Shown: positions 1 through 17,640 of the stretch, one piece after another
Position numbering within the stretch: the stretch's first letter is position 1
How the letters are laid out: every line of letters starts with the position of its first letter
Translations under genes and position numbers: made by a program
Notes under the pieces: generated by a model
The model's input: the letters and a program-made list of their open reading frames with translations, nothing else
Databases searched by the model: none
Told to the model about the DNA's origin: nothing
Assembly (NCBI GenBank): GCA_965644315.1
Contig: CBFFRQ010000148.1
Coordinates: 1 to 30,945 of the forward strand
Length of the DNA: 30,945 bases
Source: Caecitellus pseudoparvulus
Lineage: Eukaryota > Protista > Bigyra: Bicosoecida
Direction: 5' to 3'

Positions 1-603
1 TAACCCTAACCCTAACCCTAACCCTAACCCTAACCCTAACCCTAACCCTAACCCTAACCCTAACCCTAACCCTAACCCTAACCCTAACCCTAACCCTAAC
101 CCTAACCCTAACCCTAACCCTAACCCTAACCCTAACCCTAACCCTAACCCTAACCCTAACCCTAACCCTAACCCTAACCCTAACCCTAACCCTAACCCTA
201 ACCCTAACCCTAACCCTAACCCTAACCCTAACCCTAACCCTAACCCTAACCCTAACCCTAACCCTAACCCTAACCCTAACCCTAACCCTAACCCTAACCC
301 TAACCCTAACCCTAACCCTAACCCTAACCCTAACCCTAACCCTAACCCTAACCCTAACCCTAACCCTAACCCTAACCCTAACCCTAACCCTAACCCTAAC
401 CCTAACCCTAACCCTAACCCTAACCCTAACCCTAACCCTAACCCTAACCCTAACCCTAACCCTAACCCTAACCCTAACCCTAACCCTAACCCTAACCCTA
501 ACCCTAACCCTAACCCTAACCCTAACCCTAACCCTAACCCTAACCCTAACCCTAACCCTAACCCTAACCCTAACCCTAACCCTAACCCTAACCCTAACCC
601 TAA
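1..603 (+). repeat. Terminal telomeric array (CCCTAA/TTAGGG)n, about 100 perfect units
   Basis: Uninterrupted TAACCC from base 1 to 603. The C-rich strand at the 5' end of the + strand indicates a left chromosome end. Confidence 0.99.
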
Positions 604-814
604 TGTCAACCTAATCATAGGTTGTGCATTGCTAACATTGCCTAATCCAGGCGCTCGTGCACCCAAGTGTGGTGTTGCACAGTGTTTGGGTTGGCAGTGC
701 AGCGCGCGGGTGGCAGCTGTGCGAATTCCGCACGCCATCACACCAGCGCAAGCAGTGTGCACTCCCCGCGGGAGTCTGCACCTGTGGATACCTGCATCAC
801 GTTCCATCATCACC

Positions 815-3800
815 ATGGAAGCCAAGACAAGTCAAGTACTGGGTGCGCTCTTCGTGGATAAGTGCATTGCTGCGCGAGCAATGCGTGGACCAAGAACGGG
901 CGGATTTACTGACATGCCGCGCCGAGGCGCTGCACGAACGTTTGAGCTTGGCGGAGTGCCCATCGACGAAGACCCTTCAACATCTTCATCAACAATCCGA
1001 GATTCCTGGCTTCAAGTCTTTGGTGAGGCGGCGGAGGCCCAGTTCCCTGGCATCTGTGCGGAAGTTGGGCGTGGTGCAGCGGCGTTGCGCCGCCCACAAG
1101 GAACCCCAGCTGCCCTGCTAGTCTCGCTTGGCGGAGGAAGTGCCAGCGCAGAGCTGGCACGGAGCATACGCGAAGCAGCAGCACGTGAGGACGACTTCAC
1201 TGTGCGCCTTGGACGAGGTGGCTTCATGGCTGTGGTGTTTCCAGACACACGCCAGTTCGCCAACGCCAAGGCCAAGGTGCAGGTGACTGCCTCGGCCCCA
1301 GTGCTCAAGGCGGCCCACCTCCTGATGCCCCAAGCCACGAAGATTGCTGTTGAGACAGGTGACGTAAGCTCAGTCGTGAAGCTCGTCAAGTCCCATCTTC
1401 ATGGCCACTCGCCGCCTGCTCGTCAAGACCGCCACTTCGTCCGACATTCCGTCCCCGTCAAGGGCGACGCCGCTGTCGACAAAGTGAACCGGCCTGCTCC
1501 ACCCAAGCCTGCCCACACTGCTCATCATGTGCCAGGCAAGCGCAAGAAGGTACGCCGAGGACAGCGCTCGAAGTCTTCGAAGCCATCCAATGTCGTGCCA
1601 GGACGAACGTTCGCTGACCTCTTCAAGACTCCCCCGTCCGAGCCCTCAGCAAGCCGACGCCCCTTCCGTACAGTGATGCCTGCCCCCACCACTTCACCGC
1701 GACCCACGACGGAGGTTGTCCTTCCATCCTCTCGGGTGCGCACTGGGGCTAGCACGCGATGGGACCAACCGCCAACTGCTGAGCAAGACTCAAAGCAACA
1801 ACACCATGCCCAGTCAGCAGCCCAACCCGCTCAGGCACCCAGCACTGAAACGGCCAGGACTTTGTTTGTTGGTGCAGACAAGCCAAGTGTCAAGTCTGAA
1901 CCGCAGGCATGCGACACGTTGGACATGCCAGACTCATCACCACCCTCCCCAGGAATCGTTGAAGTCGTTCGGATGGAAGACTGCAGCAGGCTCCCAGCGG
2001 ATCTCCCAAGACACAGAATCCCAACTGGGTCCCCGCTGGAACGCCTCCTTGCATCAAGCACAGTAGCTGGCAACCTTTCCGAGCGCCACTGTGTGCAAGC
2101 ATGTCTGGAAACTGCAGCGGGTGCTCAGGTGCTGGAGCCCGAGGATCTTCTCCTCCTCCAACACGCAGCCACAGTGGAAGCAGCGCAACGCGCATTCAAA
2201 ACCCTGCGCAAGCGAGAGGCTGCAGCCCTGTCTGACTCGTCCAGCTCGGATGTCCAGTGCCTGGCGCCGACTAGAGGCGTGGCCTCTTCGGATCCCGAGG
2301 ACCAGCTAGCAGCATTGGCCCGACTGCTGTACCGGTTCACTCCGGATGACTCGCTGCTGCAGCCCACGTCTCCCCCAGTGCTTCTGCCAGGTCTCCACAT
2401 GCTGCTGAACCGTATCAATGTTGGGCATGAAGACCTGCATGGCGGGAACAAGCACCATGGCGGTGTGAGTCCACAAGCGGTTGTGGACGAGGACGAGCAA
2501 GAGCGGTACTTCCATGGCGTCCACTTCGCCTTTGCTCTCCACCGGCCCCAACAAGTCCACGCTGCCCACCTGACTCTCATACTGGCTGACCATGACCGTG
2601 GAGTCCTTGTCCTATGGAACCCAGACACACCTGATGCATGCACTGAGCTGCCCATGCACAAGTGTATGCAGAGACTCTACGATGACGCAGTGGACATGGT
2701 GTACAGAGTGTCGGCAACCCCCCACACCGGGAACCCAGTCCCTCTTTGTGACAGGATCCGAGACATATTCCACAGTCTGCGCCAGTCCTTCCCTCCCCTT
2801 CCCTTTGTGGACCACGAGGGGGCTGTCCACCTCAAGACGTTCATCGCGGGGAAGTCTACCAGGGTCACCATTCAAGCAGGCCGGCTCACTCGAGCACAGG
2901 CCTCTGCAGCAAGTGAGGCAAAGGAGCGCGACCCTCTGTTCCAACTCATTCCATCAGACGAGGATGCCATGCCCCCGAGGTGGGAGCAGAGTCCGTACAC
3001 ACCAGTGGGAAAGTCCAGCAGCATCCCAGTGTCGCTCGTGTCATGGAATGTTGCTGGGTCGTGTGGCCGCAACCTGCACAAGGTTCTCATCTGCGCCCAG
3101 TCTGTGTGCCTCCGTTCATCCAGACTGGTCCTCTGCCTCACGGAACCTGGTGGCCACGGCACACTTGACTCGGAAGTCATGGGGCTCCAATGTTTCAGGC
3201 CCTCCCCCCCAGATCGTCCACCCGGTCGCAGTGAAGTTGCGCTTCTGGTCGACCGTCGTCTACGCGCCACGCAGATAGTCAACCTTGGACTCGATGGGCG
3301 CTGTGTGGTCGCCTGCTCCATCCCCATGAAGCCAAGGCCCCTTGCTGTTATCGCGGCCTACGTGCCCAACTGGCACACGGCCCAGCGGAAGAAGCCACTT
3401 GCAGACCCAGACACTAAGCTGCCCCACCGCCAAGAGGTCTGGGAGCAGCTGGCCAACGCTGTAAAAAGTCTGCGAACCACGCATATGATCTCCCTCATGG
3501 GGGACCTCAACTGCCATCCTGGTGATGGCGGACTTCCTGCTTGGGACGCAACATGCTGGCAGAACCGGACCGATGTCGCTGACCCCATCCCAGATGTCAA
3601 GGAGCTCGCAATCGTGTGCGAGCATGGTAACCTCGAGCCAGCCGGGCTCGCCGGGTGCTCCACCCATGCCACGAACGGCAGAGCCCTGGACCACATCCTT
3701 GTCTGCCCACTGCTCAAGGCCCAGGTCAAGGTGCCACACACAGTGACGACAACCTTCTCCAGTGCAGGCAAGCAGAATCCGGAGAAGTCGATCCTGAGTG

Positions 3801-4585
3801 ACCACTACCTCCTGTCAGCAACAGTCCAAGTTGTGATCCCTCCACGGCCAAAGGGTGCCCGGCATGCCCACTCTTCCTTCTCTGTGCCGCCATGGTGGGC
3901 ATCATCTACACGTGAAGGGCGCAGGGCACAGACCTTGCACAGGCGGCTGCTTGACTCATCCATCACTGGTGCCGCATCCCCCCCACCCGGCCAAGCTGCA
4001 GACACCCTGCTGTCAGGCCTGGATGATTTGGTTGCCGACGCTGCCCGACAAGCCCATGCCAAGTGCAAAGTTGTGGCACCCCCGCTGCTTCAGGCCCTTG
4101 CCGACATTCGCACCCTCAGCTCTGTCAAGAAGCGGATGACAGTGAGGACAGGGCGGATCAAGAAGCAACTCCGCAAGCTTCATCGACGCCGGCACCTTCT
4201 TCAGCATAGCCAGTCACCCCATGCCCCAGCTGACCTACGTTGTGCGGATGAACGAAAGCACATGCTCATGGAGGACCTTGCTGCCACCCATGTTGAAAGG
4301 AAGAAGGCGATGCGCAAGTGTACTCGGCTGGTTGCCAAGAAACACAAGGCCGCCATGTTCCAAGTCCAGCAGCGCATCCGGGACCTTGCCCGGCTTGACC
4401 CCTTCACTGCTCACCTGCATGTGCGGAAGCTGTCCGGCAGAAGGAGGAAGGGCACTTCGTCGTCCATCCAGTCAGTCATGGACGACAGCGGCACCCTCAT
4501 CACAGACCCATCACAAGTGCGGGCTGTGGTCAGGGACCAGATGGCCCAGATCATCAGCCCCCTCAACGGCAAGTCGTGTCCCTGA
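815..4585 (+). CDS. Retrotransposon polyprotein, N-terminal part: ORF1-like region, putative cysteine-protease-like region and APE endonuclease
   Basis: The ATG at 815 is in CACCATGG context and aligns with the ATG of the short elements. APE motifs are SWNV (3041-3052), LCLTE, AAYVP, MGDLN (GDLN 3500-3511), LDHILV and SDH (3797-3805). It ends with a typical pre-RT linker, DDSGTLITDPSQVRAVV. Confidence 0.88.
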   Translation: MEAKTSQVLGALFVDKCIAARAMRGPRTGGFTDMPRRGAARTFELGGVPIDEDPSTSSSTIRDSWLQVFGEAAEAQFPGICAEVGRGAAALRRPQGTPAALLVSLGGGSASAELARSIREAAAREDDFTVRLGRGGFMAVVFPDTRQFANAKAKVQVTASAPVLKAAHLLMPQATKIAVETGDVSSVVKLVKSHLHGHSPPARQDRHFVRHSVPVKGDAAVDKVNRPAPPKPAHTAHHVPGKRKKVRRGQRSKSSKPSNVVPGRTFADLFKTPPSEPSASRRPFRTVMPAPTTSPRPTTEVVLPSSRVRTGASTRWDQPPTAEQDSKQQHHAQSAAQPAQAPSTETARTLFVGADKPSVKSEPQACDTLDMPDSSPPSPGIVEVVRMEDCSRLPADLPRHRIPTGSPLERLLASSTVAGNLSERHCVQACLETAAGAQVLEPEDLLLLQHAATVEAAQRAFKTLRKREAAALSDSSSSDVQCLAPTRGVASSDPEDQLAALARLLYRFTPDDSLLQPTSPPVLLPGLHMLLNRINVGHEDLHGGNKHHGGVSPQAVVDEDEQERYFHGVHFAFALHRPQQVHAAHLTLILADHDRGVLVLWNPDTPDACTELPMHKCMQRLYDDAVDMVYRVSATPHTGNPVPLCDRIRDIFHSLRQSFPPLPFVDHEGAVHLKTFIAGKSTRVTIQAGRLTRAQASAASEAKERDPLFQLIPSDEDAMPPRWEQSPYTPVGKSSSIPVSLVSWNVAGSCGRNLHKVLICAQSVCLRSSRLVLCLTEPGGHGTLDSEVMGLQCFRPSPPDRPPGRSEVALLVDRRLRATQIVNLGLDGRCVVACSIPMKPRPLAVIAAYVPNWHTAQRKKPLADPDTKLPHRQEVWEQLANAVKSLRTTHMISLMGDLNCHPGDGGLPAWDATCWQNRTDVADPIPDVKELAIVCEHGNLEPAGLAGCSTHATNGRALDHILVCPLLKAQVKVPHTVTTTFSSAGKQNPEKSILSDHYLLSATVQVVIPPRPKGARHAHSSFSVPPWWASSTREGRRAQTLHRRLLDSSITGAASPPPGQAADTLLSGLDDLVADAARQAHAKCKVVAPPLLQALADIRTLSSVKKRMTVRTGRIKKQLRKLHRRRHLLQHSQSPHAPADLRCADERKHMLMEDLAATHVERKKAMRKCTRLVAKKHKAAMFQVQQRIRDLARLDPFTAHLHVRKLSGRRRKGTSSSIQSVMDDSGTLITDPSQVRAVVRDQMAQIISPLNGKSCP

Positions 4586-7521
4586 AGTTCGGACTGGGCC
4601 GGCTGCTCCCATCGGCCCCGACCCACATGTCGACTGAAGCCGCCTGGACCCCGAGCGTGGACCATATCCTGAAGAAGATCCAGTCCCTGAGCCTCCACCG
4701 CAACCCTGGCACAGGGCACTACCAGGCTGAGCATGTCAAGTATGCCAGCGAGGACTTCCGGAAGAGGTACGCTGCCGCTCTTCAACAGGCCATCAGCACC
4801 GGTTCATGTCCAAGTCAGTACCACAGTGGGGTGGGGACACTCATCCCCAAGACCGCCAGCCAGGCCGGGAGGGTGCAGACATACAGGCTCATTGTCTGCC
4901 GTCCCCCCCAAGCCAAGCTCTTCTTCTCGGTCGTGGCCTCATGTGTCGAAGACTGGGTGCAGCACTGGATCTCACATGAGCAGGCAGGCTTCACCCATGC
5001 CCGCAACACCCACGAGCAGATCCTGGCCTTGCAGGAGGTGTCCACTGCCCACCTGCGCGCCAAGCCCACTGCCAGTGTCCTTGTCCTTTTCGTGGACTTC
5101 AAGAGTGCCTTTGACACTGTCAGCCACGAAGCGATACTCGAGATCCTCGAGTCAGCAAGCCTCCCACAGCCCCTGCTCAGCTGCGTGAAGGACTACATGC
5201 AGCGCGCCACAGTGGCCATTCACACTGGCCATGGTCTTTGCGACCCCCTCCCAGTCACCAACGGGGTCCCCCAGGGTGGCGCACTGTCGCCTCTGTTGTT
5301 CAAGGTGGCTATTGATGTGCTCTCTCAACGCCTGAGAGAGCTGCCAAGTCAGGGAGTGTCAGGGGCAGGAGTGCCGACACCCCGCGGCCACGTCACGCAT
5401 ACGCTCTATGCGGACGATCTTGCTTGCCTCGCCACCACCCCTGCTGCCCTCCATCGGATGTTCCTTGAAGTCAAGGCCCTGGGCAGCCGGGTGGGCTTGG
5501 CCATCAACCCGCGCAAGTCCGGGGTCATGGTCCTCACCGGGGCGCAACAGGTCAATGGGGTGTCAGCCACGGAGCGGCGGAAGCTCATCTGGCGGTCCCG
5601 CTGGCTGAGGTCAGGGCAGTCCATGAAGGTCAAGGGGACACCCATCCAACGCACGAGCACCTACTCGTACTTGGGTGTCCCCCTGTCTGAAACTGTCAGC
5701 CGAACCCGACTGCTTGCCACGAGGCAGGCCACTCTGTCCTGCACTCGGGCTGGGTTCGGCTGCGGTGCCCTCCTCAGTAGTGCGTGGCTGAGTCCGATCC
5801 TGAAGCAGCGGATCGGCACTGCCTCCATCAACAGTGCCGCCGACTACATCTTGGCGTCCCAGGTCAGCAACTCGGTGCTACCTTTGCGGGACGTCGATCG
5901 TGGACTTGCCATCGCCTTCAGCAAGGCCCAGCTGGGGATGCAAAGCTCGCTAGCACGTATGCACAACTATGCAAAGCTTGCTGTGTGCGGCGTCTTGCCA
6001 ACACACATCCGGGCGACGAAACTCCGCAGCATTATCTTCATGAAGCTGCTGAAGAATGTCCAAGTGCCCACCCCCATGGCCAAGGCGCTGTCCATCAGCC
6101 TGCGCCAAGCCCTGGACCTGCTGCCCTCCCCCCTGGACATGGCCAGCATCTTCCTGGCCAATGTCCGCCTCGACAGGCCAGGCGCTGGAGGCATCCCAGA
6201 TCCATGGGCCTTACACGGTCTACTCGACCTCTGGCTCCTTGGATGCCTCCCTGACCGCGCACGCCTGGAGGCTGTGTGCCTGGAGCCGCCGCCTGACTCT
6301 GCCCCAGACACACACGGGGTCGACATCACCGCTGGGATGGACCCCGCCCCCCCCAAGATCCAGCTGCTTGGACTCGCGGCAGCGGAGTCCTCAGATCTGT
6401 CGGCTGCCCCCCAGTTCCCGGACACCACCCCCTGGGCCACTCGGCAACGCGTCGTCGCCTCCTTCCTTCATGTGGCCCAGACGGTCAAGTGCGGTGCAGT
6501 TGGCTACACTCCCACGGGGGAGATGAAGGCCACCAGGCGTCCGAAGGAGTACCACATCGGTGTGGGTGCTCGCTTCTTCGCCTGGCTGCACCCGATCCCT
6601 TCCTCTGTGAACCCAGTCTTCTGGGTCCACGAAGGCGATCAGGAGAGACGTGTGAAGGTGCACCTGTGGCAGACGCTTCAAGTGTTCAACGGGGATGACA
6701 CCCCGACACTGTTCAGCGCCTGCCCCCTGTGCCACAGCGTCTCCTGGTGCAGCCTGCAGGAGCACGTCCTTCTTGACTGCCCCCACCACGCCCTGGTCCC
6801 TGCGAGAAGGTCCGCCCTGTCAGAGGTGCGGAACCTCCTGTCCAGATCCAATGATGCAGTGAGGGGGTCGCCAACTGCCAGTACCTCGAAGTACCCCCCA
6901 CTGCTGGAAGCTGTTGTCCACGCCGACGAAGGCCGCTTGTTGGGCCGCCCGTGTCGCCTGCTGCTGCTGCGACTGCTGCTGTGCGGCCAGTGGCCCCATC
7001 GGTGGGGCCAGCCTCCGGCACAACAGCCCTGGAGTCCCGAGGCAGCCGCGGTCCTGAGTAACCCCCATGTCACTCTCCGCGGCTCCTCGGGTCCACTCCG
7101 CCCCCCCGAGTACTGGCGCGAGGCCCTGGTAGCTGCCACGGGCCTCGCGGTATCTGCGTGGGACGCGGTGGTGACGTGCATGCTCAGCCTTACCTCTCGT
7201 GCCGACCGTCACATCCAGAGGCACGCCCGGTACCTCTGGTGGGCGGCGCATGGACGAACGTGTCCTCTCCCAGGTTACTCGGCTCCTGATCCGAGTACTG
7301 TGAGGAAGCATGTGCGGGACGTGAAGACGCGGCGCTTCGAGCGCACTTACTTCCCTGTCAAGTCCCCTCGTCGGCCGCCTCGCTCCTTCACGAGGCAGGC
7401 CACCTTGCTCGACTTCGGGCTGGCACGGCCGGAAGTCCACGAGGAACCTCCGGCACCGTCGATTTCATCCTCGGCGTCGTCCTCTGGGTCGTCCTTGAAG
7501 TGTCCATCTGACTCTGAGTAG
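4576..7521 (+). CDS. Non-LTR reverse transcriptase with C-terminal CCHC zinc finger, probably continuous with the upstream ORF
   Basis: RT motifs are LIPK, YRLI, EQAGF, FVDFKSAFDTVSH, GVPQGGALSPLLF, YADD (5407-5418), GLAINPRKS and YLGV. The finger CPLC-x10-H-x4-C lies at 6721-6780. The frame is open from 4399 and its first ATG is at 4627. Confidence 0.93.
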   Translation: MSLKFGLGRLLPSAPTHMSTEAAWTPSVDHILKKIQSLSLHRNPGTGHYQAEHVKYASEDFRKRYAAALQQAISTGSCPSQYHSGVGTLIPKTASQAGRVQTYRLIVCRPPQAKLFFSVVASCVEDWVQHWISHEQAGFTHARNTHEQILALQEVSTAHLRAKPTASVLVLFVDFKSAFDTVSHEAILEILESASLPQPLLSCVKDYMQRATVAIHTGHGLCDPLPVTNGVPQGGALSPLLFKVAIDVLSQRLRELPSQGVSGAGVPTPRGHVTHTLYADDLACLATTPAALHRMFLEVKALGSRVGLAINPRKSGVMVLTGAQQVNGVSATERRKLIWRSRWLRSGQSMKVKGTPIQRTSTYSYLGVPLSETVSRTRLLATRQATLSCTRAGFGCGALLSSAWLSPILKQRIGTASINSAADYILASQVSNSVLPLRDVDRGLAIAFSKAQLGMQSSLARMHNYAKLAVCGVLPTHIRATKLRSIIFMKLLKNVQVPTPMAKALSISLRQALDLLPSPLDMASIFLANVRLDRPGAGGIPDPWALHGLLDLWLLGCLPDRARLEAVCLEPPPDSAPDTHGVDITAGMDPAPPKIQLLGLAAAESSDLSAAPQFPDTTPWATRQRVVASFLHVAQTVKCGAVGYTPTGEMKATRRPKEYHIGVGARFFAWLHPIPSSVNPVFWVHEGDQERRVKVHLWQTLQVFNGDDTPTLFSACPLCHSVSWCSLQEHVLLDCPHHALVPARRSALSEVRNLLSRSNDAVRGSPTASTSKYPPLLEAVVHADEGRLLGRPCRLLLLRLLLCGQWPHRWGQPPAQQPWSPEAAAVLSNPHVTLRGSSGPLRPPEYWREALVAATGLAVSAWDAVVTCMLSLTSRADRHIQRHARYLWWAAHGRTCPLPGYSAPDPSTVRKHVRDVKTRRFERTYFPVKSPRRPPRSFTRQATLLDFGLARPEVHEEPPAPSISSSASSSGSSLKCPSDSE

Positions 7522-8351
7522 CGGGCGATGTGTGTAGAGCGCGGCGCGAGGCGGTGCAAGCTTACGGCGTGGCGTGGTGACAACCACGGTCGTGGCTGAG
7601 CGAAGTGCGAGAGCAGGGTGATGTGATGTCCTTGATGAATGACGGAACCTGCGGAAAGTTGGAAGATGATGAAGTGAATATGTCCAGTATACTTACATGA
7701 TGGCTCGGGGTCCACGTGCAGCCCGAGATAGATTCCTGTGACGGGGCGCGCGGAATTTGGCAGGGTGAACACGCGGGCGCGCGGGGCAACGTCGCAGGCG
7801 GGGCGCACAGGTCCTCAGGGCCTTGAGTGATGAGTCAGCTGGATTATCTGTGAAGAAAAGGAGGTGTTCTTGGTGTTCTTGGTGCGCGGGTGGCGTTGTT
7901 CCGGCGGTGCGCGCTGCTACCACCGGCGTGGTGCAGTGCAACACCGTCGTGAAACGCCACCCGAAGGCGGCCACTGCGGCTCAGGACAGCGCGCAGTGGC
8001 CCCAGGCACACGTGCAGTGCCTGGCAAGGGCCAGGAGAAGCGGGGGGTTTCTGAATTATGAAGCGAAGTGTGGACTGGAACGAAGCAAGAGTGGGCCCGG
8101 CCCCTCTGGCTCAGCCGACTGAGCCGAGAGGGCGCGGGCGGGGCAGTTCGACACGTATGGGCGGGCGCGGGCGCGCCCTAGCAAGCGGCGGCTCATACAA
8201 CGGACGTATGTCCGTGATGGCTGCAGACCCACGAGAGTGGGAGCCGCTGTAGCGCTCCTGGTGTGCCTTGTGCACAGCAGCGAACGCTACATGTGATGCC
8301 CAAGCTGTATCGCGTGCAAGCGTGAAGGCGACATGCAATGCATTGAATGAA

Positions 8352-8362
8352 CTAACCCTAAC
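8352..8362 (+). repeat. Interstitial telomeric spacer CTAACCCTAAC
   Basis: 11 nt of telomeric repeat between the long element's 3' end and the next element's 5' end (TTTCCAAATG). Confidence 0.9.
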
Positions 8363-11281
8363 TTTCCAAATGTCAAGCTAATCACAAGTTGTGAAGTGCT
8401 AACATTGCCTAATCCAGGCGCTCGTGCACCCAAGTGTGGTGTTGCACAGTGCTTGCTGGTTGGGTGGTGCGCACCGGGGCGGGGTAGTGCGAATTCCGCA
8501 CACCATCGCACCGTGGCTCCCAGTTTGCGCCCTCGGTCGGGGCATGCACCTGGGATCGACATCAAAAGCATCATTGACAAGCATCATGAACGCCCAAGTG
8601 GATCAAGTCCTGGGGGTCCTCTTCGTGGAGGGGTGCCTGAAGCGCAAGCAAGTGCTCGGCCCCAGAACAGGTGTCTTCACTGACATGCCACGTCGGGGTG
8701 CCGCACGCACCTTCGAGCTTGGAGGACCCCTGCCCAAGACTGATCATGATAGTTCATCTTCGGCACGGGACATGTGGCTCGAGGTCTATGGGGAAGCCGC
8801 CGAACGGCTGATCCCAGGGCTGAGTGCGGAATTCGGCAACGCCAATGCGGCCCTGCGCCAGGGACCCACCGGATCGCCAACCATCCTCGTCACGCTCGGA
8901 AGTGAGGGTGATTCACCAACAGTGGCACGTCAACTTCGCATTCTTGCTGCTCAAGAGGACGACTTCGCCATTCGAGTCGGCCAAGGTGGGTTCGTCGCCG
9001 TGGCCTACACCAACACCAAGCAGTTCGCATCGGCGAAGGCGAAAGTGAAGGTGAAGGCCCACCCCACCGCCATCCAAGTGGCCCACCAAGTGACCAAGGA
9101 AGCAACCGAAATCGCCTGCCAGTCAGGTGATGTTGCCAAGGTCATGTGCCTCGTTAGGTCCCACTTCGACCATGGCCCCGTGCCAGCCCAAGCCGTCCGT
9201 CCCAGTGTCAGACAATCCGTCCCCTCCGAGGGTGATGCACCTGTCGACACCAAGACACCATCGACCTGGACTGACACTCAGCTCGACAAGGCACCGAAGA
9301 AGAAGAAGACCCGTCGAGGCAAGCGAGGAAAGGGCAAGTCAGCCGGACGATCCCTCACCTTCGAGGACGTCTTCATCAAGAACGTCCGGCCACCTGCACC
9401 TCGACCAACCTCACCACCTGCCACCCAAGGCTCACCCAAAGATACCGTCACCACCCCTGTGGTGCATGCCATGTTGCCTTCATCAAGGGTGCAGCGGGGC
9501 GTCGACCGCAAGTGGCCGTCCCCCACCCCGTCGGGCGAGGCAAGCCCCGAGGTGCACCGGTATCGGCCGTCTGCAGCAGCAGCATGGGAGGTGATCACAA
9601 GGGTGGTGCCTCTTCATGACAGTGTGCGGACACCCGAGCACCTGGCCGAGTACCCCATCAAGCCTGGCCCTCTGGCCGACCTGCTGTCATCGACCCACGT
9701 GTACTCTAACGTGGGGGGCGGGCCTGTGTCCAGGCCTGTCTCGAGACGGCAGCAGGGGAGAGGGTCTTCGAGGCTGGGGACCTCCTCCTACTCCAGCATG
9801 CAGCCACCATCAACGCTGCCCAGCTTGCCTTCAAGCACATGGTCAGGCAGCTGGAGGGGGTGGTCAGTGACTCGTCCAGCTCGGACATCATGGACGTCGG
9901 CCAGAAGCCACCCTCCCCCTTCCGCTCAGACGGGCAACGGGTGGCCGTCTTCCGCAACATGCTGCACCAGCACTCGCCGGATGACACCTTCCTGGCCCCA
10001 GGTACACCACCAGTCCTGCTTCCCGGCCTGCACCTGCTCATCGACCGCATCAACCAAGGGTACCGTGCCCCAGCCGGGCATGATGACCTTGGCCAGGCCG
10101 GCGTCGACCCCAGCCAGGTTGATGAAGAGGGTGACCAAGAGGGGCACCTCGACGGAGTGCTGTATGCCTTCGCACTTCGAGAGGTGTGGACCGACAACAC
10201 GGCCCATCTGCAGCTCATCCTCGTCGACCATGATCGAGGCAAGCTGGTGCTGTGGAACCCCGACATCCCTGACCTCCATGACGAGCTGCCCCTGCACAAG
10301 TGCATGACCCGGCTGGCAGCCGAAGGCATCAACGTCTTGTACCGGATCTGGACCACACCCGAGGCGGGCAGTCCAGCACCCTTCCGGGACAGGCTTCGAG
10401 GGGCACTCCAGTCTCTCCGAGATGACTTCCCCCTGCCTCACAAGGCCACCGACGGCACCGTGCACCCCCAGACCCTCATCGCTGGCAAGGGCACAAGGGT
10501 GGCCATGCCTCATGGGCGGATGACCCGACAGCAGGCCGCCACCCTGGAGGCTGAGGTCAAGGACCCCCTCAAGCGGCTGGTGCCTGAAGACGGCGAGGGT
10601 CGCCTGCCCAAGGTCAAGGATGTGCCCCACATCTCGATCGGGCAGATGGGTGGACGCCTGATGTAAGTCACCTGTGGGGGCATACTCCCTGTGCCACACA
10701 TGACTGAAGCTTTGTGTCGCGACCGACGCACATAGCTGACATCGGACATTGGAAAGTCCAACCCAACCTCACCATCACCAACCCAACATCGATACCAACA
10801 CATCAGGACTCGGCTCAGTGGAAGGGGAAGGCACTTGCAGCAAGATCTGTGAGGCCGCCCCCAAACCTGAGCCGAAGGGACAGCCGGGCTGGGTCGTGTG
10901 CTTGCATCTCAGCAACACCCAGTCCGTGTCGAGTCCATATCCTCCAGCCCACACCGCCACCCAAGCCAAGCAAGTCGGGTCTCCACCCCTGGACATCGGA
11001 CCGAGACGGACGAGACTGGACTGGACGGACAAGACAAGAGTGGACCGAGACCTGGACCTACACCTCAAGACCATCCCACCGGGGCGGGCGCTGAAGCGCC
11101 AAGACAGACGGCGACTTATACAACGGACACGAGTCTGTGCTAGTCGCAAAGCCGTGCAAGCGGTGCCGTCGTGGTGTCTGTGTCACTGCATTCTGTTGTG
11201 GCGCAGGTGGCACCACATGTCCAAGCCCAAGCTGTACCATGATGTAGCCTGCATGGAGGCAATCTGCAATGCATTGAGTAG
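8363..11281 (+). mobile_element. RT-less (non-autonomous) telomeric retroelement, copy 1
   Basis: It shares a 55-nt identical 5' block and 3'-terminal motifs with the long element. It encodes only a paralog of the N-terminal region, is flanked by telomeric repeats and is near-identical to 11299-14221. Confidence 0.88.
8586..10666 (+). CDS. ORF1-like protein of the short element, copy 1 (frameshifted at a G run, likely a sequencing error)
   Basis: By eye it matches 11522-13606 except G6 versus G7 (9713-9718 versus 12649-12655, frameshifting) and C5 versus C8 (10429-10433 versus 13366-13373). Confidence 0.75.
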
Positions 11282-11298
11282 CTAACCCTAACCCTAAC
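11282..11298 (+). repeat. Interstitial telomeric spacer CTAACCCTAACCCTAAC
   Basis: 17 nt of telomeric repeat between the two short elements. Confidence 0.92.
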
Positions 11299-14221
11299 TT
11301 TCCAAATGTCAAGCTAATCACAAGTTGTGAAGTGCTAACATTGCCTAATCCAGGCGCTCGTGCACCCAAGTGTGGTGTTGCACAGTGCTTGCTGGTTGGG
11401 TGGTGCGCACCGGGGCGGGGTAGTGCGAATTCCGCACACCATCGCACCGTGGCTCCCAGTTTGCGCCCTCGGTCGGGGCATGCACCTGGGATCGACATCA
11501 AAAGCATCATTGACAAGCATCATGAACGCCCAAGTGGATCAAGTCCTGGGGGTCCTCTTCGTGGAGGGGTGCCTGAAGCGCAAGCAAGTGCTCGGCCCCA
11601 GAACAGGTGTCTTCACTGACATGCCACGTCGGGGTGCCGCACGCACCTTCGAGCTTGGAGGACCCCTGCCCAAGACTGATCATGATAGTTCATCTTCGGC
11701 ACGGGACATGTGGCTCGAGGTCTATGGGGAAGCCGCCGAACGGCTGATCCCAGGGCTGAGTGCGGAATTCGGCAACGCCAATGCGGCCCTGCGCCAGGGA
11801 CCCACCGGATCGCCAACCATCCTCGTCACGCTCGGAAGTGAGGGTGATTCACCAACAGTGGCACGTCAACTTCGCATTCTTGCTGCTCAAGAGGACGACT
11901 TCGCCATTCGAGTCGGCCAAGGTGGGTTCGTCGCCGTGGCCTACACCAACACCAAGCAGTTCGCATCGGCGAAGGCGAAAGTGAAGGTGAAGGCCCACCC
12001 CACCGCCATCCAAGTGGCCCACCAAGTGACCAAGGAAGCAACCGAAATCGCCTGCCAGTCAGGTGATGTTGCCAAGGTCATGTGCCTCGTTAGGTCCCAC
12101 TTCGACCATGGCCCCGTGCCAGCCCAAGCCGTCCGTCCCAGTGTCAGACAATCCGTCCCCTCCGAGGGTGATGCACCTGTCGACACCAAGACACCATCGA
12201 CCTGGACTGACACTCAGCTCGACAAGGCACCGAAGAAGAAGAAGACCCGTCGAGGCAAGCGAGGAAAGGGCAAGTCAGCCGGACGATCCCTCACCTTCGA
12301 GGACGTCTTCATCAAGAACGTCCGGCCACCTGCACCTCGACCAACCTCACCACCTGCCACCCAAGGCTCACCCAAAGATACCGTCACCACCCCTGTGGTG
12401 CATGCCATGTTGCCTTCATCAAGGGTGCAGCGGGGCGTCGACCGCAAGTGGCCGTCCCCCACCCCGTCGGGCGAGGCAAGCCCCGAGGTGCACCGGTATC
12501 GGCCGTCTGCAGCAGCAGCATGGGAGGTGATCACAAGGGTGGTGCCTCTTCATGACAGTGTGCGGACACCCGAGCACCTGGCCGAGTACCCCATCAAGCC
12601 TGGCCCTCTGGCCGACCTGCTGTCATCGACCCACGTGTACTCTAACGTGGGGGGGCGGGCCTGTGTCCAGGCCTGTCTCGAGACGGCAGCAGGGGAGAGG
12701 GTCTTCGAGGCTGGGGACCTCCTCCTACTCCAGCATGCAGCCACCATCAACGCTGCCCAGCTTGCCTTCAAGCACATGGTCAGGCAGCTGGAGGGGGTGG
12801 TCAGTGACTCGTCCAGCTCGGACATCATGGACGTCGGCCAGAAGCCACCCTCCCCCTTCCGCTCAGACGGGCAACGGGTGGCCGTCTTCCGCAACATGCT
12901 GCACCAGCACTCGCCGGATGACACCTTCCTGGCCCCAGGTACACCACCAGTCCTGCTTCCCGGCCTGCACCTGCTCATCGACCGCATCAACCAAGGGTAC
13001 CGTGCCCCAGCCGGGCATGATGACCTTGGCCAGGCCGGCGTCGACCCCAGCCAGGTTGATGAAGAGGGTGACCAAGAGGGGCACCTCGACGGAGTGCTGT
13101 ATGCCTTCGCACTTCGAGAGGTGTGGACCGACAACACGGCCCATCTGCAGCTCATCCTCGTCGACCATGATCGAGGCAAGCTGGTGCTGTGGAACCCCGA
13201 CATCCCTGACCTCCATGACGAGCTGCCCCTGCACAAGTGCATGACCCGGCTGGCAGCCGAAGGCATCAACGTCTTGTACCGGATCTGGACCACACCCGAG
13301 GCGGGCAGTCCAGCACCCTTCCGGGACAGGCTTCGAGGGGCACTCCAGTCTCTCCGAGATGACTTCCCCCCCCTGCCTCACAAGGCCACCGACGGCACCG
13401 TGCACCCCCAGACCCTCATCGCTGGCAAGGGCACAAGGGTGGCCATGCCTCATGGGCGGATGACCCGACAGCAGGCCGCCACCCTGGAGGCTGAGGTCAA
13501 GGACCCCCTCAAGCGGCTGGTGCCTGAAGACGGCGAGGGTCGCCTGCCCAAGGTCAAGGATGTGCCCCACATCTCGATCGGGCAGATGGGTGGACGCCTG
13601 ATGTAAGTCACCTGTGGGGGCATACTCCCTGTGCCACACATGACTGAAGCTTTGTGTCGCGACCGACGCACATAGCTGACATCGGACATTGGAAAGTCCA
13701 ACCCAACCTCACCATCACCAACCCAACATCGATACCAACACATCAGGACTCGGCTCAGTGGAAGGGGAAGGCACTTGCAGCAAGATCTGTGAGGCCGCCC
13801 CCAAACCTGAGCCGAAGGGACAGCCGGGCTGGGTCGTGTGCTTGCATCTCAGCAACACCCAGTCCGTGTCGAGTCCATATCCTCCAGCCCACACCGCCAC
13901 CCAAGCCAAGCAAGTCGGGTCTCCACCCCTGGACATCGGACCGAGACGGACGAGACTGGACTGGACGGACAAGACAAGAGTGGACCGAGACCTGGACCTA
14001 CACCTCAAGACCATCCCACCGGGGCGGGCGCTGAAGCGCCAAGACAGACGGCGACTTATACAACGGACACGAGTCTGTGCTAGTCGCAAAGCCGTGCAAG
14101 CGGTGCCGTCGTGGTGTCTGTGTCACTGCATTCTGTTGTGGCGCAGGTGGCACCACATGTCCAAGCCCAAGCTGTACCATGATGTAGCCTGCATGGAGGC
14201 AATCTGCAATGCATTGAGTAG
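11299..14221 (+). mobile_element. RT-less (non-autonomous) telomeric retroelement, copy 2
   Basis: It has the same termini as copy 1 (5' TTTCCAAATGTCAAG, 3' GCAATGCATTGAGTAG), an intact ORF and flanking telomeric repeats. Confidence 0.88.
11522..13606 (+). CDS. ORF1-like protein of the short element (694 aa), paralog of the long element's N-terminal region
   Basis: Collinear conserved blocks with the 815 ORF include QVLG.LFV..C, FTDMPRRGAARTFELGG, EDDF..R.G.GGF.AV, CVQACLETAAG, PPVLLPGLH.L..RIN, AHL.LIL.DHDRG.LVLWNPD and ELP.HKCM.RL. It stops just before the position of the APE SWNV motif. Confidence 0.87.
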   Translation: MNAQVDQVLGVLFVEGCLKRKQVLGPRTGVFTDMPRRGAARTFELGGPLPKTDHDSSSSARDMWLEVYGEAAERLIPGLSAEFGNANAALRQGPTGSPTILVTLGSEGDSPTVARQLRILAAQEDDFAIRVGQGGFVAVAYTNTKQFASAKAKVKVKAHPTAIQVAHQVTKEATEIACQSGDVAKVMCLVRSHFDHGPVPAQAVRPSVRQSVPSEGDAPVDTKTPSTWTDTQLDKAPKKKKTRRGKRGKGKSAGRSLTFEDVFIKNVRPPAPRPTSPPATQGSPKDTVTTPVVHAMLPSSRVQRGVDRKWPSPTPSGEASPEVHRYRPSAAAAWEVITRVVPLHDSVRTPEHLAEYPIKPGPLADLLSSTHVYSNVGGRACVQACLETAAGERVFEAGDLLLLQHAATINAAQLAFKHMVRQLEGVVSDSSSSDIMDVGQKPPSPFRSDGQRVAVFRNMLHQHSPDDTFLAPGTPPVLLPGLHLLIDRINQGYRAPAGHDDLGQAGVDPSQVDEEGDQEGHLDGVLYAFALREVWTDNTAHLQLILVDHDRGKLVLWNPDIPDLHDELPLHKCMTRLAAEGINVLYRIWTTPEAGSPAPFRDRLRGALQSLRDDFPPLPHKATDGTVHPQTLIAGKGTRVAMPHGRMTRQQAATLEAEVKDPLKRLVPEDGEGRLPKVKDVPHISIGQMGGRLM

Positions 14222-14263
14222 CTAACCCTAACCTAACCTACCCTAACCCTAACCCTAACCTAA
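14222..14263 (+). repeat. Degenerate innermost telomeric tract (CCCTAA, CCTAA and CCTA variants)
   Basis: The sequence reads CTAA CCCTAA CCTAA CCTA CCCTAA CCCTAA CCCTAA CCTAA. Confidence 0.92.
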
Positions 14264-14278
14264 TTGAATGAACTAACC
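14263..14278 (+). mobile_element. Relic 3' terminus of a long-type element
   Basis: ATTGAATGAACTAACC is identical to 8342-8357, the long element's 3' end plus telomere junction. Confidence 0.7.
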
Positions 14279-15420: not shown

Positions 15421-16011
15421 TGGGTGGGACTATCTTGGCGTTGTTGGTTGTGTGAGCGGCTATCCTATGGTATGGCATGCCAACTCGCTGCCGGACAATT
15501 GCCGAGGCCGGCTTTAGCCAAACTCAAAGCCTGTCCGTGCTCGTTTCCGGCGTATCTCTTCGCTCCGTGCCCCTGTCGGCCTTGCGCTGCCAGTGCTTCA
15601 AAAACCACAAGCCAAGCTGGCCACACTCTCCGCTGTGGCACAACTCAAACCAAACCTTGCCAGGGGTAACGGAAATTCAGCCTGGCATCCAGCAGGTAAG
15701 GACATCCTTCAGCTCGATGTCGGCGTGAACCTTTCTTCCCGTGTATCTTGTCAGGAGGTGGTGCGTGCAGCGTTGGCGTGTCACTTGCCGTTGCGATTTC
15801 CGCACATGGAGCCCTGCCGCATTCTTCTCACAAAGACTGGCGCAGTGGCTGCGTCTGCATTTCCACAGGTTTGACGTCGGCATCGGTTTACGCCTTCCCT
15901 TGCTGCATACCTGTTGCTCATCTGCGCAACATTTCGGAGCTTCACTCATACGAGCCTGTTTCTACCTGTGGCTCCAACTTCGGCGTCGTTTGCATCCTGG
16001 CGTCACGTATC

Positions 16012-16833
16012 ATGGCAACCATTGATGATCCGGCACAACTCAAAACCCAATGGAAAGCCGCTTGTGAAAGAAGTGATGTTTTTCAGCTGTGGCTTATCTT
16101 GGGGCGAGTCAGCGCTCAGTCTTCATCTTTGGCAGAGACGCTGGACAGTTCTGACACAACAGATGGGTTTCTAGTCGCTTGCCGATGGGGGGAGGTGGAG
16201 TTGATGCGTGAGCTGCTAGCCCTGGCAGGTGATCTTGCGGTGGATGTGCACGCGCCAGATGGGGGTGGGCCTGAGGCCGGCTTTCGAGCCGCATGCACAA
16301 ATGGCGACATAGACATCGTGTGCGAGCTGCTGGCCCTCACTGGGGCGCGGGAAGTGGATGTACACGCGGCGGATCGGGCTGGACCTGAGGCTGCCTTCCG
16401 AGAGGCATGCCGTGGTGGCTACACAGACATCGTACGAGTTTTGTTGGGCCTCACCGGGGCACGGGAAGTGGATGTGAATGTGCCGGATTGGGCTGGACCT
16501 GAGGCTGCCTTCCGAGGAGCATGCGAGAGTGGCCGCACAGACGTCGTGCGTGAGCTGCTGGCCCTTACTGGAGCGCGGGAAATCGATGTGCATGCAGAGT
16601 ATTTGGCGAAGCCTGATGCCGCTTTTCGATTGGCACTCGGAAAAGACCATGCAGACACCATGCGAGAGCTACTCGCCCTCACTGGTCACCGAGCCATCCC
16701 ACCTCACATCTGGCTCCAAGAAGGGGAGTCTGCCACGCAAGCTGCGCGTGATGCAGTGTGGGCTGGCACCAGCACTCGGCATGGGCGACGTGCGATGCTC
16801 ATGCTAAAATCTCGTGGTGCGGGACGTGCGTGA
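16012..16833 (+). CDS. Ankyrin-like repeat protein, paralog A (273 aa, about 4 full 38-aa repeats)
   Basis: Repeats of VDVHA.D..GPEAAFR.AC..G..DIVRELLALTG. The ATG at 16012 was chosen by alignment of the N-terminal W.AAC motif with its paralogs. Confidence 0.85.
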   Translation: MATIDDPAQLKTQWKAACERSDVFQLWLILGRVSAQSSSLAETLDSSDTTDGFLVACRWGEVELMRELLALAGDLAVDVHAPDGGGPEAGFRAACTNGDIDIVCELLALTGAREVDVHAADRAGPEAAFREACRGGYTDIVRVLLGLTGAREVDVNVPDWAGPEAAFRGACESGRTDVVRELLALTGAREIDVHAEYLAKPDAAFRLALGKDHADTMRELLALTGHRAIPPHIWLQEGESATQAARDAVWAGTSTRHGRRAMLMLKSRGAGRA

Positions 16834-17640
16834 GGAACGGTCCCAATGCAGTCCCTGATTGCGACAGCGCTTATTCCTCTCGCACACCCTCCAACTCCCC
16901 AGGCGCCGAGTCAGAATCCTGCATTACAGAGCAACACCACCTTTCAGCGCTTGAACGGCATTCAAGACGTAGCTATGCCCACTCCTTGGAACGTGGCGTC
17001 TTCTTTCTTTCAAGGCACGCCAATCATGTGCATCTCGCACATTTCGTCGCTGCCAAGCACACCCAAGCAGCTGGGAACGTTACAGAGACGTGCATCCTGC
17101 AAGGCAGCATCAGCACCTTTCTCTGTAGCAGCACAGCACACTAACAGAGATCCACACCTTCCAGTTGAGAGGTGCAGTCAATGAAGGTGGCAACGCGTCG
17201 CCGATCTCCGCGACGCCACGAAACACCCTCCAGACGAGCTCGCCCCTTCCCGCTCTTAACAACACTCGCAGCCTCGCCCTACCAGCTGCCTATCACACTG
17301 CAAAGTGGCAGTCGGGCGTTGAATCCCGTGGCAAGGTGTGGCAAGGTCAGGGGTACCGGCACAGCAGCTGGTGTGGCCTTGCAACCACGCAGTTGCCCCC
17401 AGCACCGCCGTCCCACTGCCTGACATGCGCTCACAACCTTAGCTGTGCGCAGCATGGTTGGCTTGGGTGTGAAGTGCCACCACCTCAGTGAGGGGAGAAA
17501 GCGTATGCTTTGAAGGCAGTGCTGTGTCTGCAAAGACACCCTGCTTGGAAGTCACAAGTTAAGCGTAGGGACCTGTTTCCCGCACCATAGGGATCCAGGC
17601 AAGCCTCACGACTGACCCCATGCTTCTGACTTTTCGACAA

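What the first reader, a model, noticed from the sequence alone, without database searches (positions are those of the whole stretch)
1..14278. Two-component telomere-targeted retrotransposon system (APE-RT element plus RT-less coding partner) embedded in TTAGGG telomeric repeats
Seen: three elements plus a relic, all in one orientation with 5' ends toward the tip, each bounded by CCCTAA repeats. One carries APE and RT. Two carry only a paralogous N-terminal ORF but share both termini with it. Known: Drosophila HeT-A (gag only) with TART/TAHRE, Bombyx TRAS/SART, Giardia GilM/GilT and Magnaporthe MoTeR1/2 occupy telomeres. Inference: this is an independent HeT-A/TAHRE-like partnership in a lineage that still has telomerase-type repeats. 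It builds a buffer of about 14 kb between genes and the tip. I do not recognise the family.
Basis: partly seen in the sequence, partly recalled or inferred. Interest (0 to 1): 0.93.

Follow-up and report, generated by a model that had tools for sequence, protein, structure and literature searches.

The report
Telomere-targeted retrotransposons with RT-less coding partner
This chromosome end of a marine heterotrophic stramenopile carries a head-to-tail stack of previously undescribed retrotransposons that insert only into TTAGGG telomere repeats, including a very abundant short partner that keeps just the N-terminal protein, a convergent parallel to the telomere elements of fruit flies, silkworm and rice-blast fungus.

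Summary
After 603 nt of CCCTAA repeats the window holds a 7.75-kb APE+RT non-LTR element. Two 2.9-kb RT-less elements and a 16-nt relic follow, all with the 5' end toward the tip and joined by short CTAACC tracts.

Genome-wide I found at least 71 3' ends of the short element and 36 of the long ones. Every one whose contig length I know lies within about 30 kb of a contig end, in the telomere-pointing polarity. 5'-truncated copies keep exact 3' ends.

- **Frame break:** the apparent APE/RT break at 4557 is a homopolymer assembly error. The real element has one ORF of about 2,300 aa. At least four deep autonomous lineages exist.
- **Shared N-terminal protein:** it is 42% identical between the long and short elements and has no relative among 1.84 billion proteins. 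Its C-terminal half models as a papain-fold cysteine protease, with Josephin deubiquitinases as best matches (moderate confidence).
- **3' UTR:** a structured 3' UTR with compensatory changes is shared by all lineages. This fits trans-mobilisation, which is inferred and not shown.
- **Telomerase:** an apparently intact TERT gene is present.

Verdict: a new variant of a known kind. First-reader notes of this scan flagged similar stacks on other pieces of the same genome.

The parts
1..603 (+). Terminal telomere tract, (TAACCC)100, C-strand reading inward from the tip
   Evidence: Tandem Repeats Finder gives 100.5 perfect copies. The pattern search gives 99 matches here.
604..8357 (+). Autonomous element A (7.75 kb), 5' end at the telomere; its 3' end runs into ...GAATGAACTAACC with no poly(A)
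   Evidence: Near-identical full-length copies lie on C135 and C34, and a 94% copy on C105.
815..3019 (+). N-terminal protein region of A: N-half 815-1459, basic linker, and papain-fold (Josephin-like) domain 1925-3019 with invariant Cys/His/Asn-Asp motifs
   Evidence: Alignments. Model with pLDDT 61 and pTM 0.66. Fold matches. dN/dS 0.14-0.23 between A subfamilies.
3041..3805 (+). APE-type endonuclease domain, catalytic motifs intact
   Evidence: PF03372 at E 1.4e-6, above the cut-off. Motifs are conserved in all lineages. dN/dS 0.03.
4558..4562 (+). C5 homopolymer where the assembly lacks one C, creating the apparent APE/RT frame break (ORF 629-4585 versus 4576-7521)
   Evidence: An extra C is present in the contigs of runs X1, X5 and X6 and in copies on C34, C105 and C41. 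Relatives have one ORF of 2,000-2,300 aa.
4843..5682 (+). Reverse transcriptase domain (YADD present)
   Evidence: PF00078 at E 8.6e-32. PDB L1 ORF2p and R2 match at about 1e-17. YADD is seen. dN/dS 0.07.
6721..6780 (+). C-terminal CX2CX10HX4C zinc-knuckle-like motif
   Evidence: Conserved in all five autonomous copies examined.
7522..8357 (+). 3' UTR of A; the last ~250 nt form conserved hairpins shared with the RT-less element
   Evidence: RNAalifold on 9 copies of 4 lineages: 61 pairs, 15 with compensatory double changes.
8358..8362 (+). Junction CTAAC between A and B
   Evidence: Read directly.
8363..11287 (+). RT-less element B (2.9 kb); differs from C only at two homopolymer runs
11288..11298 (+). 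Internal telomere tract CTAACCCTAAC
11299..14227 (+). RT-less element C (2.9 kb). Its ORF runs from the ATG at 11522 to the stop at 13606 (694 aa) and encodes only the N-terminal protein, ending where APE begins in A
   Evidence: At least 47 full-length copies at about 100% identity and 71 3' ends genome-wide.
14228..14262 (+). Degenerate telomere tract, an old telomere seed
14263..14278 (+). Relic: a 16-nt extreme 5' truncation matching the 3' terminus of A, followed by unique subtelomeric DNA
   Evidence: Read directly. Comparable 28-29-nt remnants of the short element occur on C187, C190 and C140.

Best explanation
**What it is.** The first 14.3 kb is an array built by repeated terminal or near-terminal insertion of a new lineage of APE-type non-LTR retrotransposons that target TTAGGG telomere repeats.

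**The autonomous elements.** They are 6.5-7.8 kb and carry one ORF of about 2,000-2,300 aa. The ORF reads, in order:
1. an N-terminal protein (an unassigned N-half, a basic linker, and a papain-fold cysteine-protease-like domain);
2. an APE endonuclease;
3. a reverse transcriptase;
4. a CCHC motif.

**The partner.** An abundant 2.9-kb element keeps only the N-terminal protein plus the family's 5' end and structured 3' UTR. Inferred: the RT of the autonomous elements copies it in trans by recognising that 3' UTR.

**Insertion mechanism (inferred).** The transcripts have no poly(A) and end in CUAAC(C). This end pairs with the G-strand, either at the natural 3' overhang or at an APE nick. The G-strand 3' OH then primes cDNA synthesis toward the tip. 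This gives the fixed polarity, the fixed repeat register and the frequent 5' truncation.

**After insertion.** Telomerase, which is present, re-caps the new end.

**Protease role (speculative).** The protease-like domain may release the N-terminal product from the polyprotein, near the conserved P-x-T-P-V-G-K motif. The partner's ORF stops at that point.
For: **Shown**
- **Layout and polarity:** the window layout is.
- **Genome-wide position:** there are 36 A-like and 71 short-element 3' ends. Forward-strand ones all lie within 30 kb of contig starts. Reverse-strand ones lie near contig ends on all 11 contigs of known length.
- **Junction register:** in the ~20 contig ends read, all but two 3' junctions continue as CTAACC in one register; the other two keep only part of it (CTA, CTAA).
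- **Truncation series:** 5'-truncated copies with exact 3' ends begin at element positions 241, 1023, 1180, 2421 and 2478, and remnants go down to 16-29 nt.
- **Array diversity:** the order of elements differs between chromosome ends, and no inverted telomere tracts occur.
- **Coding integrity:** APE, RT and CCHC motifs are intact in all lineages. Purifying selection acts on every domain, with dN/dS 0.03-0.34.
- **Single ORF:**
- **Partner ORF:** it is intact at 41-46% identity to every autonomous lineage, and the Cys/His/Asn-Asp motifs are invariant.
- **Shared 3' UTR structure:** compensatory changes include the partner.
- **Papain fold:** Josephins rank first in three structure searches.
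- **Telomerase:** TERT has its RBD and RT domains in one open frame.
Against: - There are no RNA data, so transcripts, their 3' ends and trans-mobilisation are unobserved (one search found no RNA run).
- Near-100% identity among copies could partly reflect subtelomeric recombination or assembly polishing.
- Array order could not be checked on raw long reads.
- The fold model is of moderate quality (pLDDT 61) and Z 7.5 is below the tool's caution line of 8.
- The Josephin Pfam model does not match, and the profile-profile comparison is not significant (E 0.069, probability under 1%).
- Three reverse-strand copies (C111, C129, C137) lie on contigs whose lengths I could not obtain.
- The RT clade is not assigned.
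Confidence: 0.8

Rival explanations
1. The 2.9-kb units are Y'-like subtelomeric repeats. They would spread between chromosome ends by recombination or break-induced replication, not by reverse transcription. The RT elements would then be unrelated neighbours.
For: - Copies are about 100% identical at more than 40 ends.
- At least five contigs carry tandem dimers with the same minimal CTAAC junction (coordinates).
- Short telomere tracts between units are also typical of yeast Y' arrays (my own knowledge).
Against: - A graded series of 5' truncations with exact 3' ends.
- The same unit has different neighbours at different ends.
- The termini and the 3' UTR structure are shared with RT-bearing elements, with compensatory changes.
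- The ORF is a paralogue of the retrotransposon's own N-terminal region.
Confidence: 0.08
2. The short element is only a dead internal-deletion derivative. It would be a passive hitch-hiker whose ORF has no function, so there is no real partnership.
For: - No variation exists within the family to measure selection, since all copies are about 100% identical.
- No expression data are available.
- Non-autonomous deletion derivatives are common among LINEs (my own knowledge).
Against: - The 694-aa ORF is uninterrupted although only 41-46% identical to every autonomous lineage. This implies long independent evolution under coding constraint.
- All invariant motifs of the protease-like domain are retained.
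- The ORF ends precisely at the domain boundary before APE.
- Its copy number exceeds that of all autonomous lineages together.
Confidence: 0.15
3. The APE/RT frame break in the window reflects programmed -1 ribosomal frameshifting between two ORFs.
For: In the window the two ORFs overlap by 10 nt in the -1 relation. Two other assembled copies are near-identical.
Against: - The break is a C5 versus C6 run.
- Short-read contigs of X1, X5 and X6 all carry the extra C.
- The C34, C105 and C41 copies do too.
- Four related lineages have one continuous ORF.
- The other indels among near-identical copies are also in homopolymers.
Confidence: 0.02

Closest known systems
TRAS1 / SART1 (R1-clade telomere-specific LINEs of Bombyx mori and other insects)
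   Same: APE-type non-LTR elements that insert only into telomerase-type repeats at a fixed position and orientation. They coexist with the simple repeats and form subterminal arrays (PMC10088271, PMC7265360).
   Different: TRAS and SART have two ORFs, with a zinc-knuckle Gag-like ORF1, and a poly(A) tail. Here there is one ORF with a papain-fold N-terminal domain and no poly(A), plus a coding RT-less partner. The host is a stramenopile. The RT clade is not determined, and the APE shows no sequence match to solved LINE endonucleases.
HeT-A / TAHRE / TART of Drosophila
   Same: Head-to-tail terminal arrays with 3' ends toward the centromere. An RT-less element encodes only the N-terminal (Gag-like) protein, shares its ends with an RT-bearing relative, and outnumbers it (PMC5537684).
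   Different: Drosophila has no telomerase and no simple repeats. Here TERT is intact and 0.6-1.9 kb TTAGGG caps are present. The shared protein is not Gag-like by any test. The autonomous element has an intact APE.
MoTeR1 / MoTeR2 (Magnaporthe) and FoTeRs (Fusarium)
   Same: A telomere-repeat-targeted retrotransposon with a shorter non-autonomous partner sharing both termini, in a telomerase-positive microbe. The arrays are separated by short telomere tracts (PMC10088271, PMC12857005, PMC8381367).
   Different: MoTeRs belong to the CRE-like, restriction-like-endonuclease group (PMC10088271). Here the endonuclease is APE. By my own recollection MoTeR2 does not encode a paralogue of a MoTeR1 protein domain.
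Zepp (Chlorella) and Tx1-1_ACar (anole), L1-group telomere-associated LINEs
   Same: APE plus RT plus a C-terminal CCHC architecture. They accumulate at or in telomeric repeats in telomerase-positive hosts (PMC10088271).
   Different: Those have poly(A) tails and no protease-like N-terminal domain (my own knowledge). No coding non-autonomous partner has been described. The relationship of the RTs was not tested here.
[quoted passage not shown]
   Same: A single-ORF, target-specific non-LTR element with an N-terminal clan-CA cysteine protease domain (PMC4640811).
   Different: Those use a restriction-like endonuclease and a Ulp1 (C48) domain, and target spliced-leader or U2 genes. Here the endonuclease is APE, the best fold match is Josephin (C86), and the target is the telomere.

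Membership tests
APE-type non-LTR retrotransposon (LINE) | N-terminal apurinic-like endonuclease with catalytic N, E, D-N and D-H motifs | tested here: met
   PF03372 is above its cut-off. The motifs SWNV, LTE, GDLN and SDH are conserved in all lineages.
APE-type non-LTR retrotransposon (LINE) | Reverse transcriptase with the YxDD active site, downstream of the endonuclease | tested here: met
   PF00078 at E 1e-30 to 1e-32. YADD is seen. L1 ORF2p and R2 are the best solved relatives.
APE-type non-LTR retrotransposon (LINE) | No terminal repeats; 5'-truncated copies with complete 3' ends | tested here: met
   No LTR-like repeats appear within an element.
APE-type non-LTR retrotransposon (LINE) | Poly(A) or simple-repeat 3' tail and target-site duplications | tested here: not met
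   The 3' ends run into CTAACC with no A-run. Target-site duplications cannot be defined inside a tandem repeat. Several accepted LINE clades also lack poly(A), so this does not exclude membership.
Telomere-specific LINEs of the R1 clade (TRAS/SART) | Insertion restricted to telomeric repeats, with fixed register and orientation | tested here: met
Telomere-specific LINEs of the R1 clade (TRAS/SART) | RT groups within the R1 clade | not testable with these tools
   No reference set of named LINE clades is available. The nearest database proteins are unnamed and at most 30% identical.
Telomere-specific LINEs of the R1 clade (TRAS/SART) | Two ORFs, with ORF1 carrying CCHC zinc knuckles | tested here: not met
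   There is a single ORF. No Pfam domain or zinc knuckle is found in the N-terminal 800 aa.
Drosophila-type retrotransposon telomeres (HeT-A/TAHRE) | An RT-less element encoding the N-terminal protein and sharing its ends with an RT-bearing relative | tested here: met
Drosophila-type retrotransposon telomeres (HeT-A/TAHRE) | Telomerase absent; the elements themselves form the extreme terminus | tested here: not met
   TERT has its RBD and RT in one open frame. Terminal TTAGGG tracts of 600-1,880 nt cap every array examined.
Josephin / MJD deubiquitinases (PF02099, peptidase C86) | Match to the family's sequence model | tested here: not met
   PF02099 finds two host genes but not the element, even at E up to 10. 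hmmscan at E up to 10 shows nothing relevant.
Josephin / MJD deubiquitinases (PF02099, peptidase C86) | Papain-like fold with Cys at a helix N-terminus and His and Asn/Asp on following strands | tested here: inconclusive
   The model has pLDDT 61 and pTM 0.66. Josephins rank 1-3 of 48,161 chains, at Z 7.5, 7.1 and 6.4, and nearly all top-50 matches are papain-fold proteases. The Foldseek top hit is a Josephin at probability 0.95 and E 8.5e-3. The ESM Atlas gives C39, C70 and Josephin clusters at TM under 0.5. hhalign puts the Cys, His and W-N-x-D motifs in register, but at E 0.069 and probability under 1%.
Josephin / MJD deubiquitinases (PF02099, peptidase C86) | Isopeptidase or peptidase activity | not testable with these tools
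   This needs a biochemical assay.

The most novel reading that the evidence does not exclude
The RT-less element may be more than a parasite of a parasite. On this reading it is the main supplier of a Josephin-like protease/deubiquitinase that acts as the system's Gag-equivalent. The elements would then be added preferentially to critically short or broken ends, making them a retrotransposon-based back-up for telomere healing in a telomerase-positive protist. Internal telomere tracts are mostly 5-62 nt, against 600-1,880 nt terminal caps. That would be a Drosophila-like mutualism caught at an early stage and evolved independently in stramenopiles.
Probability: 0.15. Interest if true: 0.85.

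Novelty: new variant of a known kind. Interest (0 to 1): 0.64.

Why it matters
**Where it sits.** Telomere-targeted retrotransposons are known from insects, Giardia, Chlorella, a lizard, rotifers and a few fungi (PMC10088271, PMC12857005). I found none described from stramenopiles.

**What it adds.** This system is another independent origin of the autonomous-plus-coding-non-autonomous arrangement that in Drosophila led to loss of telomerase. Here telomerase is still present, and the copies look young and active.

**What could be tested.**
- How telomere specificity arises in an APE-type element that lacks poly(A).
- Whether short telomeres are preferred targets.
- What an orphan papain-fold domain does in a LINE.

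**Practical note.** The elements explain why many contigs of this assembly break in subtelomeres. The work also shows that the assembly carries homopolymer errors that create false frameshifts.

Tried and rejected
1. **Programmed -1 frameshift between APE and RT:** rejected as a homopolymer error.
2. **Sequence homology for the shared N-terminal protein:**
   - Pfam found nothing.
   - PDB sequence and profile searches found nothing meaningful.
   - An exhaustive phmmer search of 1.84 billion proteins found only a 48-aa fragment at 96% identity.
   - The ESM Atlas feature search gave no usable hit.
   - A JGI metagenome contig scan found no relative.
3. **Fold of the N-half (815-1459):** the model failed at pLDDT 35. 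My impression from the sequence pattern that it is RRM-like is unsupported, and I do not claim it.
4. **Josephin membership by sequence:** PF02099 does not match and hhalign is not significant. Only the fold-level statement is kept.
5. **RT clade:** no named LINE reference set is available. L1 ORF2p and R2 tie among solved structures, and the Atlas gives only generic APE+RT clusters. An RT phylogeny against Repbase clades was therefore not done.
6. **APE against solved LINE endonucleases:** no match at E up to 10.
8. **Expression:** no RNA run holds the element.
9. **Organism identity:** resolved only to a heterotrophic marine stramenopile.
10. **Handling:**
Intact natural copies were used by reference.
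Full report
**Observation.**
The window starts with 100 perfect TAACCC units at 1-603. The 12-mer telomere pattern occurs 102 times against 0.05 expected. Reading the junctions and the repeat analysis give this layout:

| Coordinates | Feature |
|---|---|
| 604-8357 | element A |
| 8358-8362 | CTAAC junction |
| 8363-11287 | element B |
| 11288-11298 | CTAACCCTAAC |
| 11299-14227 | element C |
| 14228-14262 | degenerate CTAACC tract |
| 14263-14278 | 16-nt copy of the extreme 3' end of A |

Unique DNA with ankyrin-repeat ORFs follows. All elements point the same way, with the 5' end toward the tip.
- A carries APE (PF03372) and RT (PF00078).
- B and C carry only an ORF that is 42% identical (E 7e-165) to the first ~800 aa of the A protein.
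- B and C share the A 5' ~360 nt (74%) and 3' ~200 nt (~70%).

**Genome-wide distribution.**
The window is contig C148 of a 30.6-Mb, 215-contig assembly.
- A pattern for the A-like 3' terminus plus CTAACC finds 36 sites, 30 forward and 6 reverse.
- The 3' terminus of the short element finds 71 sites, 59 forward and 12 reverse.
- Every forward site lies within 30 kb of a contig start.
- Reverse sites lie 0.1-20 kb from the contig end on all 11 contigs whose length I obtained: C12, C13, C34, C42, C88, C105, C114, C145, C151, C194 and C208.

No copy was seen at an internal site.
- In the ~20 contig ends I could read, all but two 3' ends continue as CTAACC in the same repeat register, with no poly(A); two innermost copies (C67, C151) keep only CTA or CTAA before unique DNA.
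- There are no inverted telomere tracts.
- The order of elements differs from end to end. Examples are telomere-A-C-C here, telomere-C-A-truncated A on C135, and telomere-C-telomere(541 nt)-C-A2 on C44.
- 5'-truncated copies with complete 3' ends are frequent. The short element starts at positions 241, 1023, 1180, 2421, 2478, 2716 and 2754, with remnants down to 28-29 nt. A starts at 2344, 2432, 3539, 3631, 4829 and further in.

These are the hallmarks of target-primed reverse transcription. They are not the hallmarks of block duplication.

**The autonomous element has one ORF.**
In the window APE sits in ORF 629-4585 and RT in ORF 4576-7521, which is in the -1 frame.
- The protein text is continuous across the break in the way usual for a LINE ORF2.
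- Aligning copies shows that the window lacks one C in a C run at 4558-4562 relative to C34, C105 and C41. All other indels among near-identical copies are also in homopolymers.
- Contigs of three sequencing runs, including the likely source sample and a marine metagenome, all carry the extra C.
- Relatives have one uninterrupted ORF of 2,298, 2,307 and 2,003 aa, with APE and RT in the same frame.

The break is therefore an assembly error and not a programmed frameshift.
- B differs from C only at a G6/G7 and a C5/C8 run, so its broken ORF is probably the same kind of artefact.
- I did not repair any sequence. Intact natural copies were used by reference.
- APE catalytic motifs, YADD and a C-terminal CX2CX10HX4C motif are conserved in all lineages.
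- Between the two A subfamilies (94% nt identity) every domain is under purifying selection. dN/dS is 0.03 for APE, 0.07 for RT, 0.14 for the protease-like domain and 0.23 for the N-half.

**Lineages.**
The protease-like domain defines four deep autonomous lineages, here called A, A2, A3 and A4. A and A2 are 65% identical, and A3 and A4 are 40-47% identical to the rest. The RT-less lineage is 41-46% identical to all of them. The RT-less ORF has therefore been kept open through as much divergence as separates whole autonomous families. It retains every invariant motif. It stops a few residues after the conserved P-x-T-P-V-G-K motif that precedes APE in the long elements. Its copies are about 100% identical and outnumber all autonomous copies together.

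**The shared N-terminal protein.**
No Pfam family matches, and no PDB sequence or profile does either. The protein has no relative among 1.84 billion representative proteins apart from a 48-aa near-identical fragment.

An AlphaFold model of the C-terminal half, built on eight in-genome paralogues, reaches pLDDT 61 and pTM 0.66. In it:
- the invariant Cys of the C-V-Q-A-C-L-E motif opens a helix;
- the invariant His of A-H-L lies on a strand, and the W-N-P-D motif on a following one.

Three structure searches agree on a papain-like cysteine protease fold, with Josephin deubiquitinases first:
- VIA-align gives Z 7.5, 7.1 and 6.4 for ranks 1-3 of 48,161 chains, and nearly all top-50 matches are papain-fold proteases.
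- Foldseek gives a top probability of 0.95 at E 8.5e-3.
- The ESM Atlas gives C39, C70 and Josephin clusters.

Against a small alignment of real Josephins, hhalign places the Cys, His and W-N-x-D motifs in register. The score is not significant, at E 0.069 and probability under 1%. The Josephin Pfam model finds two host genes but not the element.

I therefore call it a papain-fold, Josephin-like domain at moderate confidence. I do not file it as a Josephin family member. The N-half could not be modelled. [quoted passage not shown] I found no description of one in an APE-type, telomere-specific element, nor of a partner that encodes nothing else.

**3' UTR and mechanism.**
The last ~250 nt of nine copies from four lineages, including the RT-less one, align. 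They fold into conserved hairpins of 61 pairs, 15 of which show compensatory double changes. This fits a stringent RT that recognises its own 3' UTR. It explains how the RT-less element could be copied in trans, which is inferred and not shown.

The polarity and register fit priming of cDNA synthesis by a G-strand 3' OH paired to a CUAACC RNA end. The OH could be the natural overhang or an APE nick. The intact, strongly constrained APE favours nicking (inference).

Internal telomere tracts are mostly 5-62 nt, with a few of 119-541 nt. Terminal caps are 600-1,880 nt. This suggests one of three things:
- insertion near the base of the tract;
- insertion onto very short telomeres;
- later shrinkage of the tract.

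At least five contigs carry tandem dimers of the short element with only CTAAC between the units (coordinates). That could reflect template jumping or recombination. This is unresolved.

**Host.**
- HSP90 is about 75% identical to that of oomycetes and diatoms. The only closer hits are unnamed metagenome proteins at 99% and 89%.
- No light-harvesting protein genes were found.
- The element's words occur in marine and aquaculture metagenomes.
- TERT is present, with its RBD and RT domains in one open frame.

The host is a marine heterotrophic stramenopile that I could not name.

**Comparison and verdict.**
In lifestyle this matches TRAS/SART, Zepp, Tx1-1_ACar, MoTeR and FoTeR. Those are telomere-repeat-targeted elements in telomerase-positive hosts (PMC10088271, PMC12857005). 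In its pairing of an RT-bearing element with an RT-less, protein-coding partner it resembles HeT-A/TAHRE and, more loosely, MoTeR1/MoTeR2.

It differs from all of them in five ways:
- a single 2,300-aa ORF;
- the orphan papain-fold N-terminal domain;
- no poly(A);
- at least four co-resident autonomous lineages;
- a stramenopile host.

Literature searches in the held library found no description of it. It is a new variant of a known kind.

First-reader notes of this scan describe similar stacks on other pieces of the same genome. They are unchecked notes, and my genome-wide mapping is consistent with them.

Noticed in passing
window 15748-22180: A cluster of four ankyrin-repeat ORFs on alternating strands, built from 114-nt (38-aa) tandem units 71-76% alike. 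It is a subtelomeric gene family right behind the element array.
   Followed up: partly
window 25780-30930 (-) and 30470-30945: A 1,716-aa uninterrupted ORF with only a sub-threshold DUF7630 match. It has 24-nt tandem repeats near its 5' end, running to the window edge.
   Followed up: no
window 4557, 6862, 6893, 8100; also 9712 and 10428: The assembly has homopolymer-length errors. Short-read contigs disagree with it at C/G runs, which creates false frameshifts in repeats. ORF breaks elsewhere in this genome should be read with that in mind.
   Followed up: yes
G000 C12, C43, C128, C133, C211 (coordinates): Tandem dimers of the 2.9-kb element sit only 2 nt apart in query coordinates, so the junction is just CTAAC. 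This is the same minimal junction at several chromosome ends. It may reflect template jumping or recombination.
   Followed up: no
L007:1251-7931 (G000 C67, distal element): A fourth autonomous lineage with a 2,227-aa ORF, only 40-43% identical to the others in the protease-like domain. It sits directly under a 1.2-kb telomere cap.
   Followed up: partly
window 11005-11045 and 13945-13985: A 19-nt unit repeated 2.2 times in the 3' UTR of the RT-less element.
   Followed up: no
L030 (G000 C13:703366-703695) and L031 (C28:48221-48541): Two host Josephin (PF02099) genes. The C13 one carries a ubiquitin-interacting-motif-like tail. They are unrelated at sequence level to the element's domain.
   Followed up: partly
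window 2400-8340 in runs X1 and X3: Summed contig word-depth rises about three-fold or more from the 5' to the 3' part of element A. This is as expected if 5'-truncated copies are common, but the tool warns that depth is not copy number.
   Followed up: no
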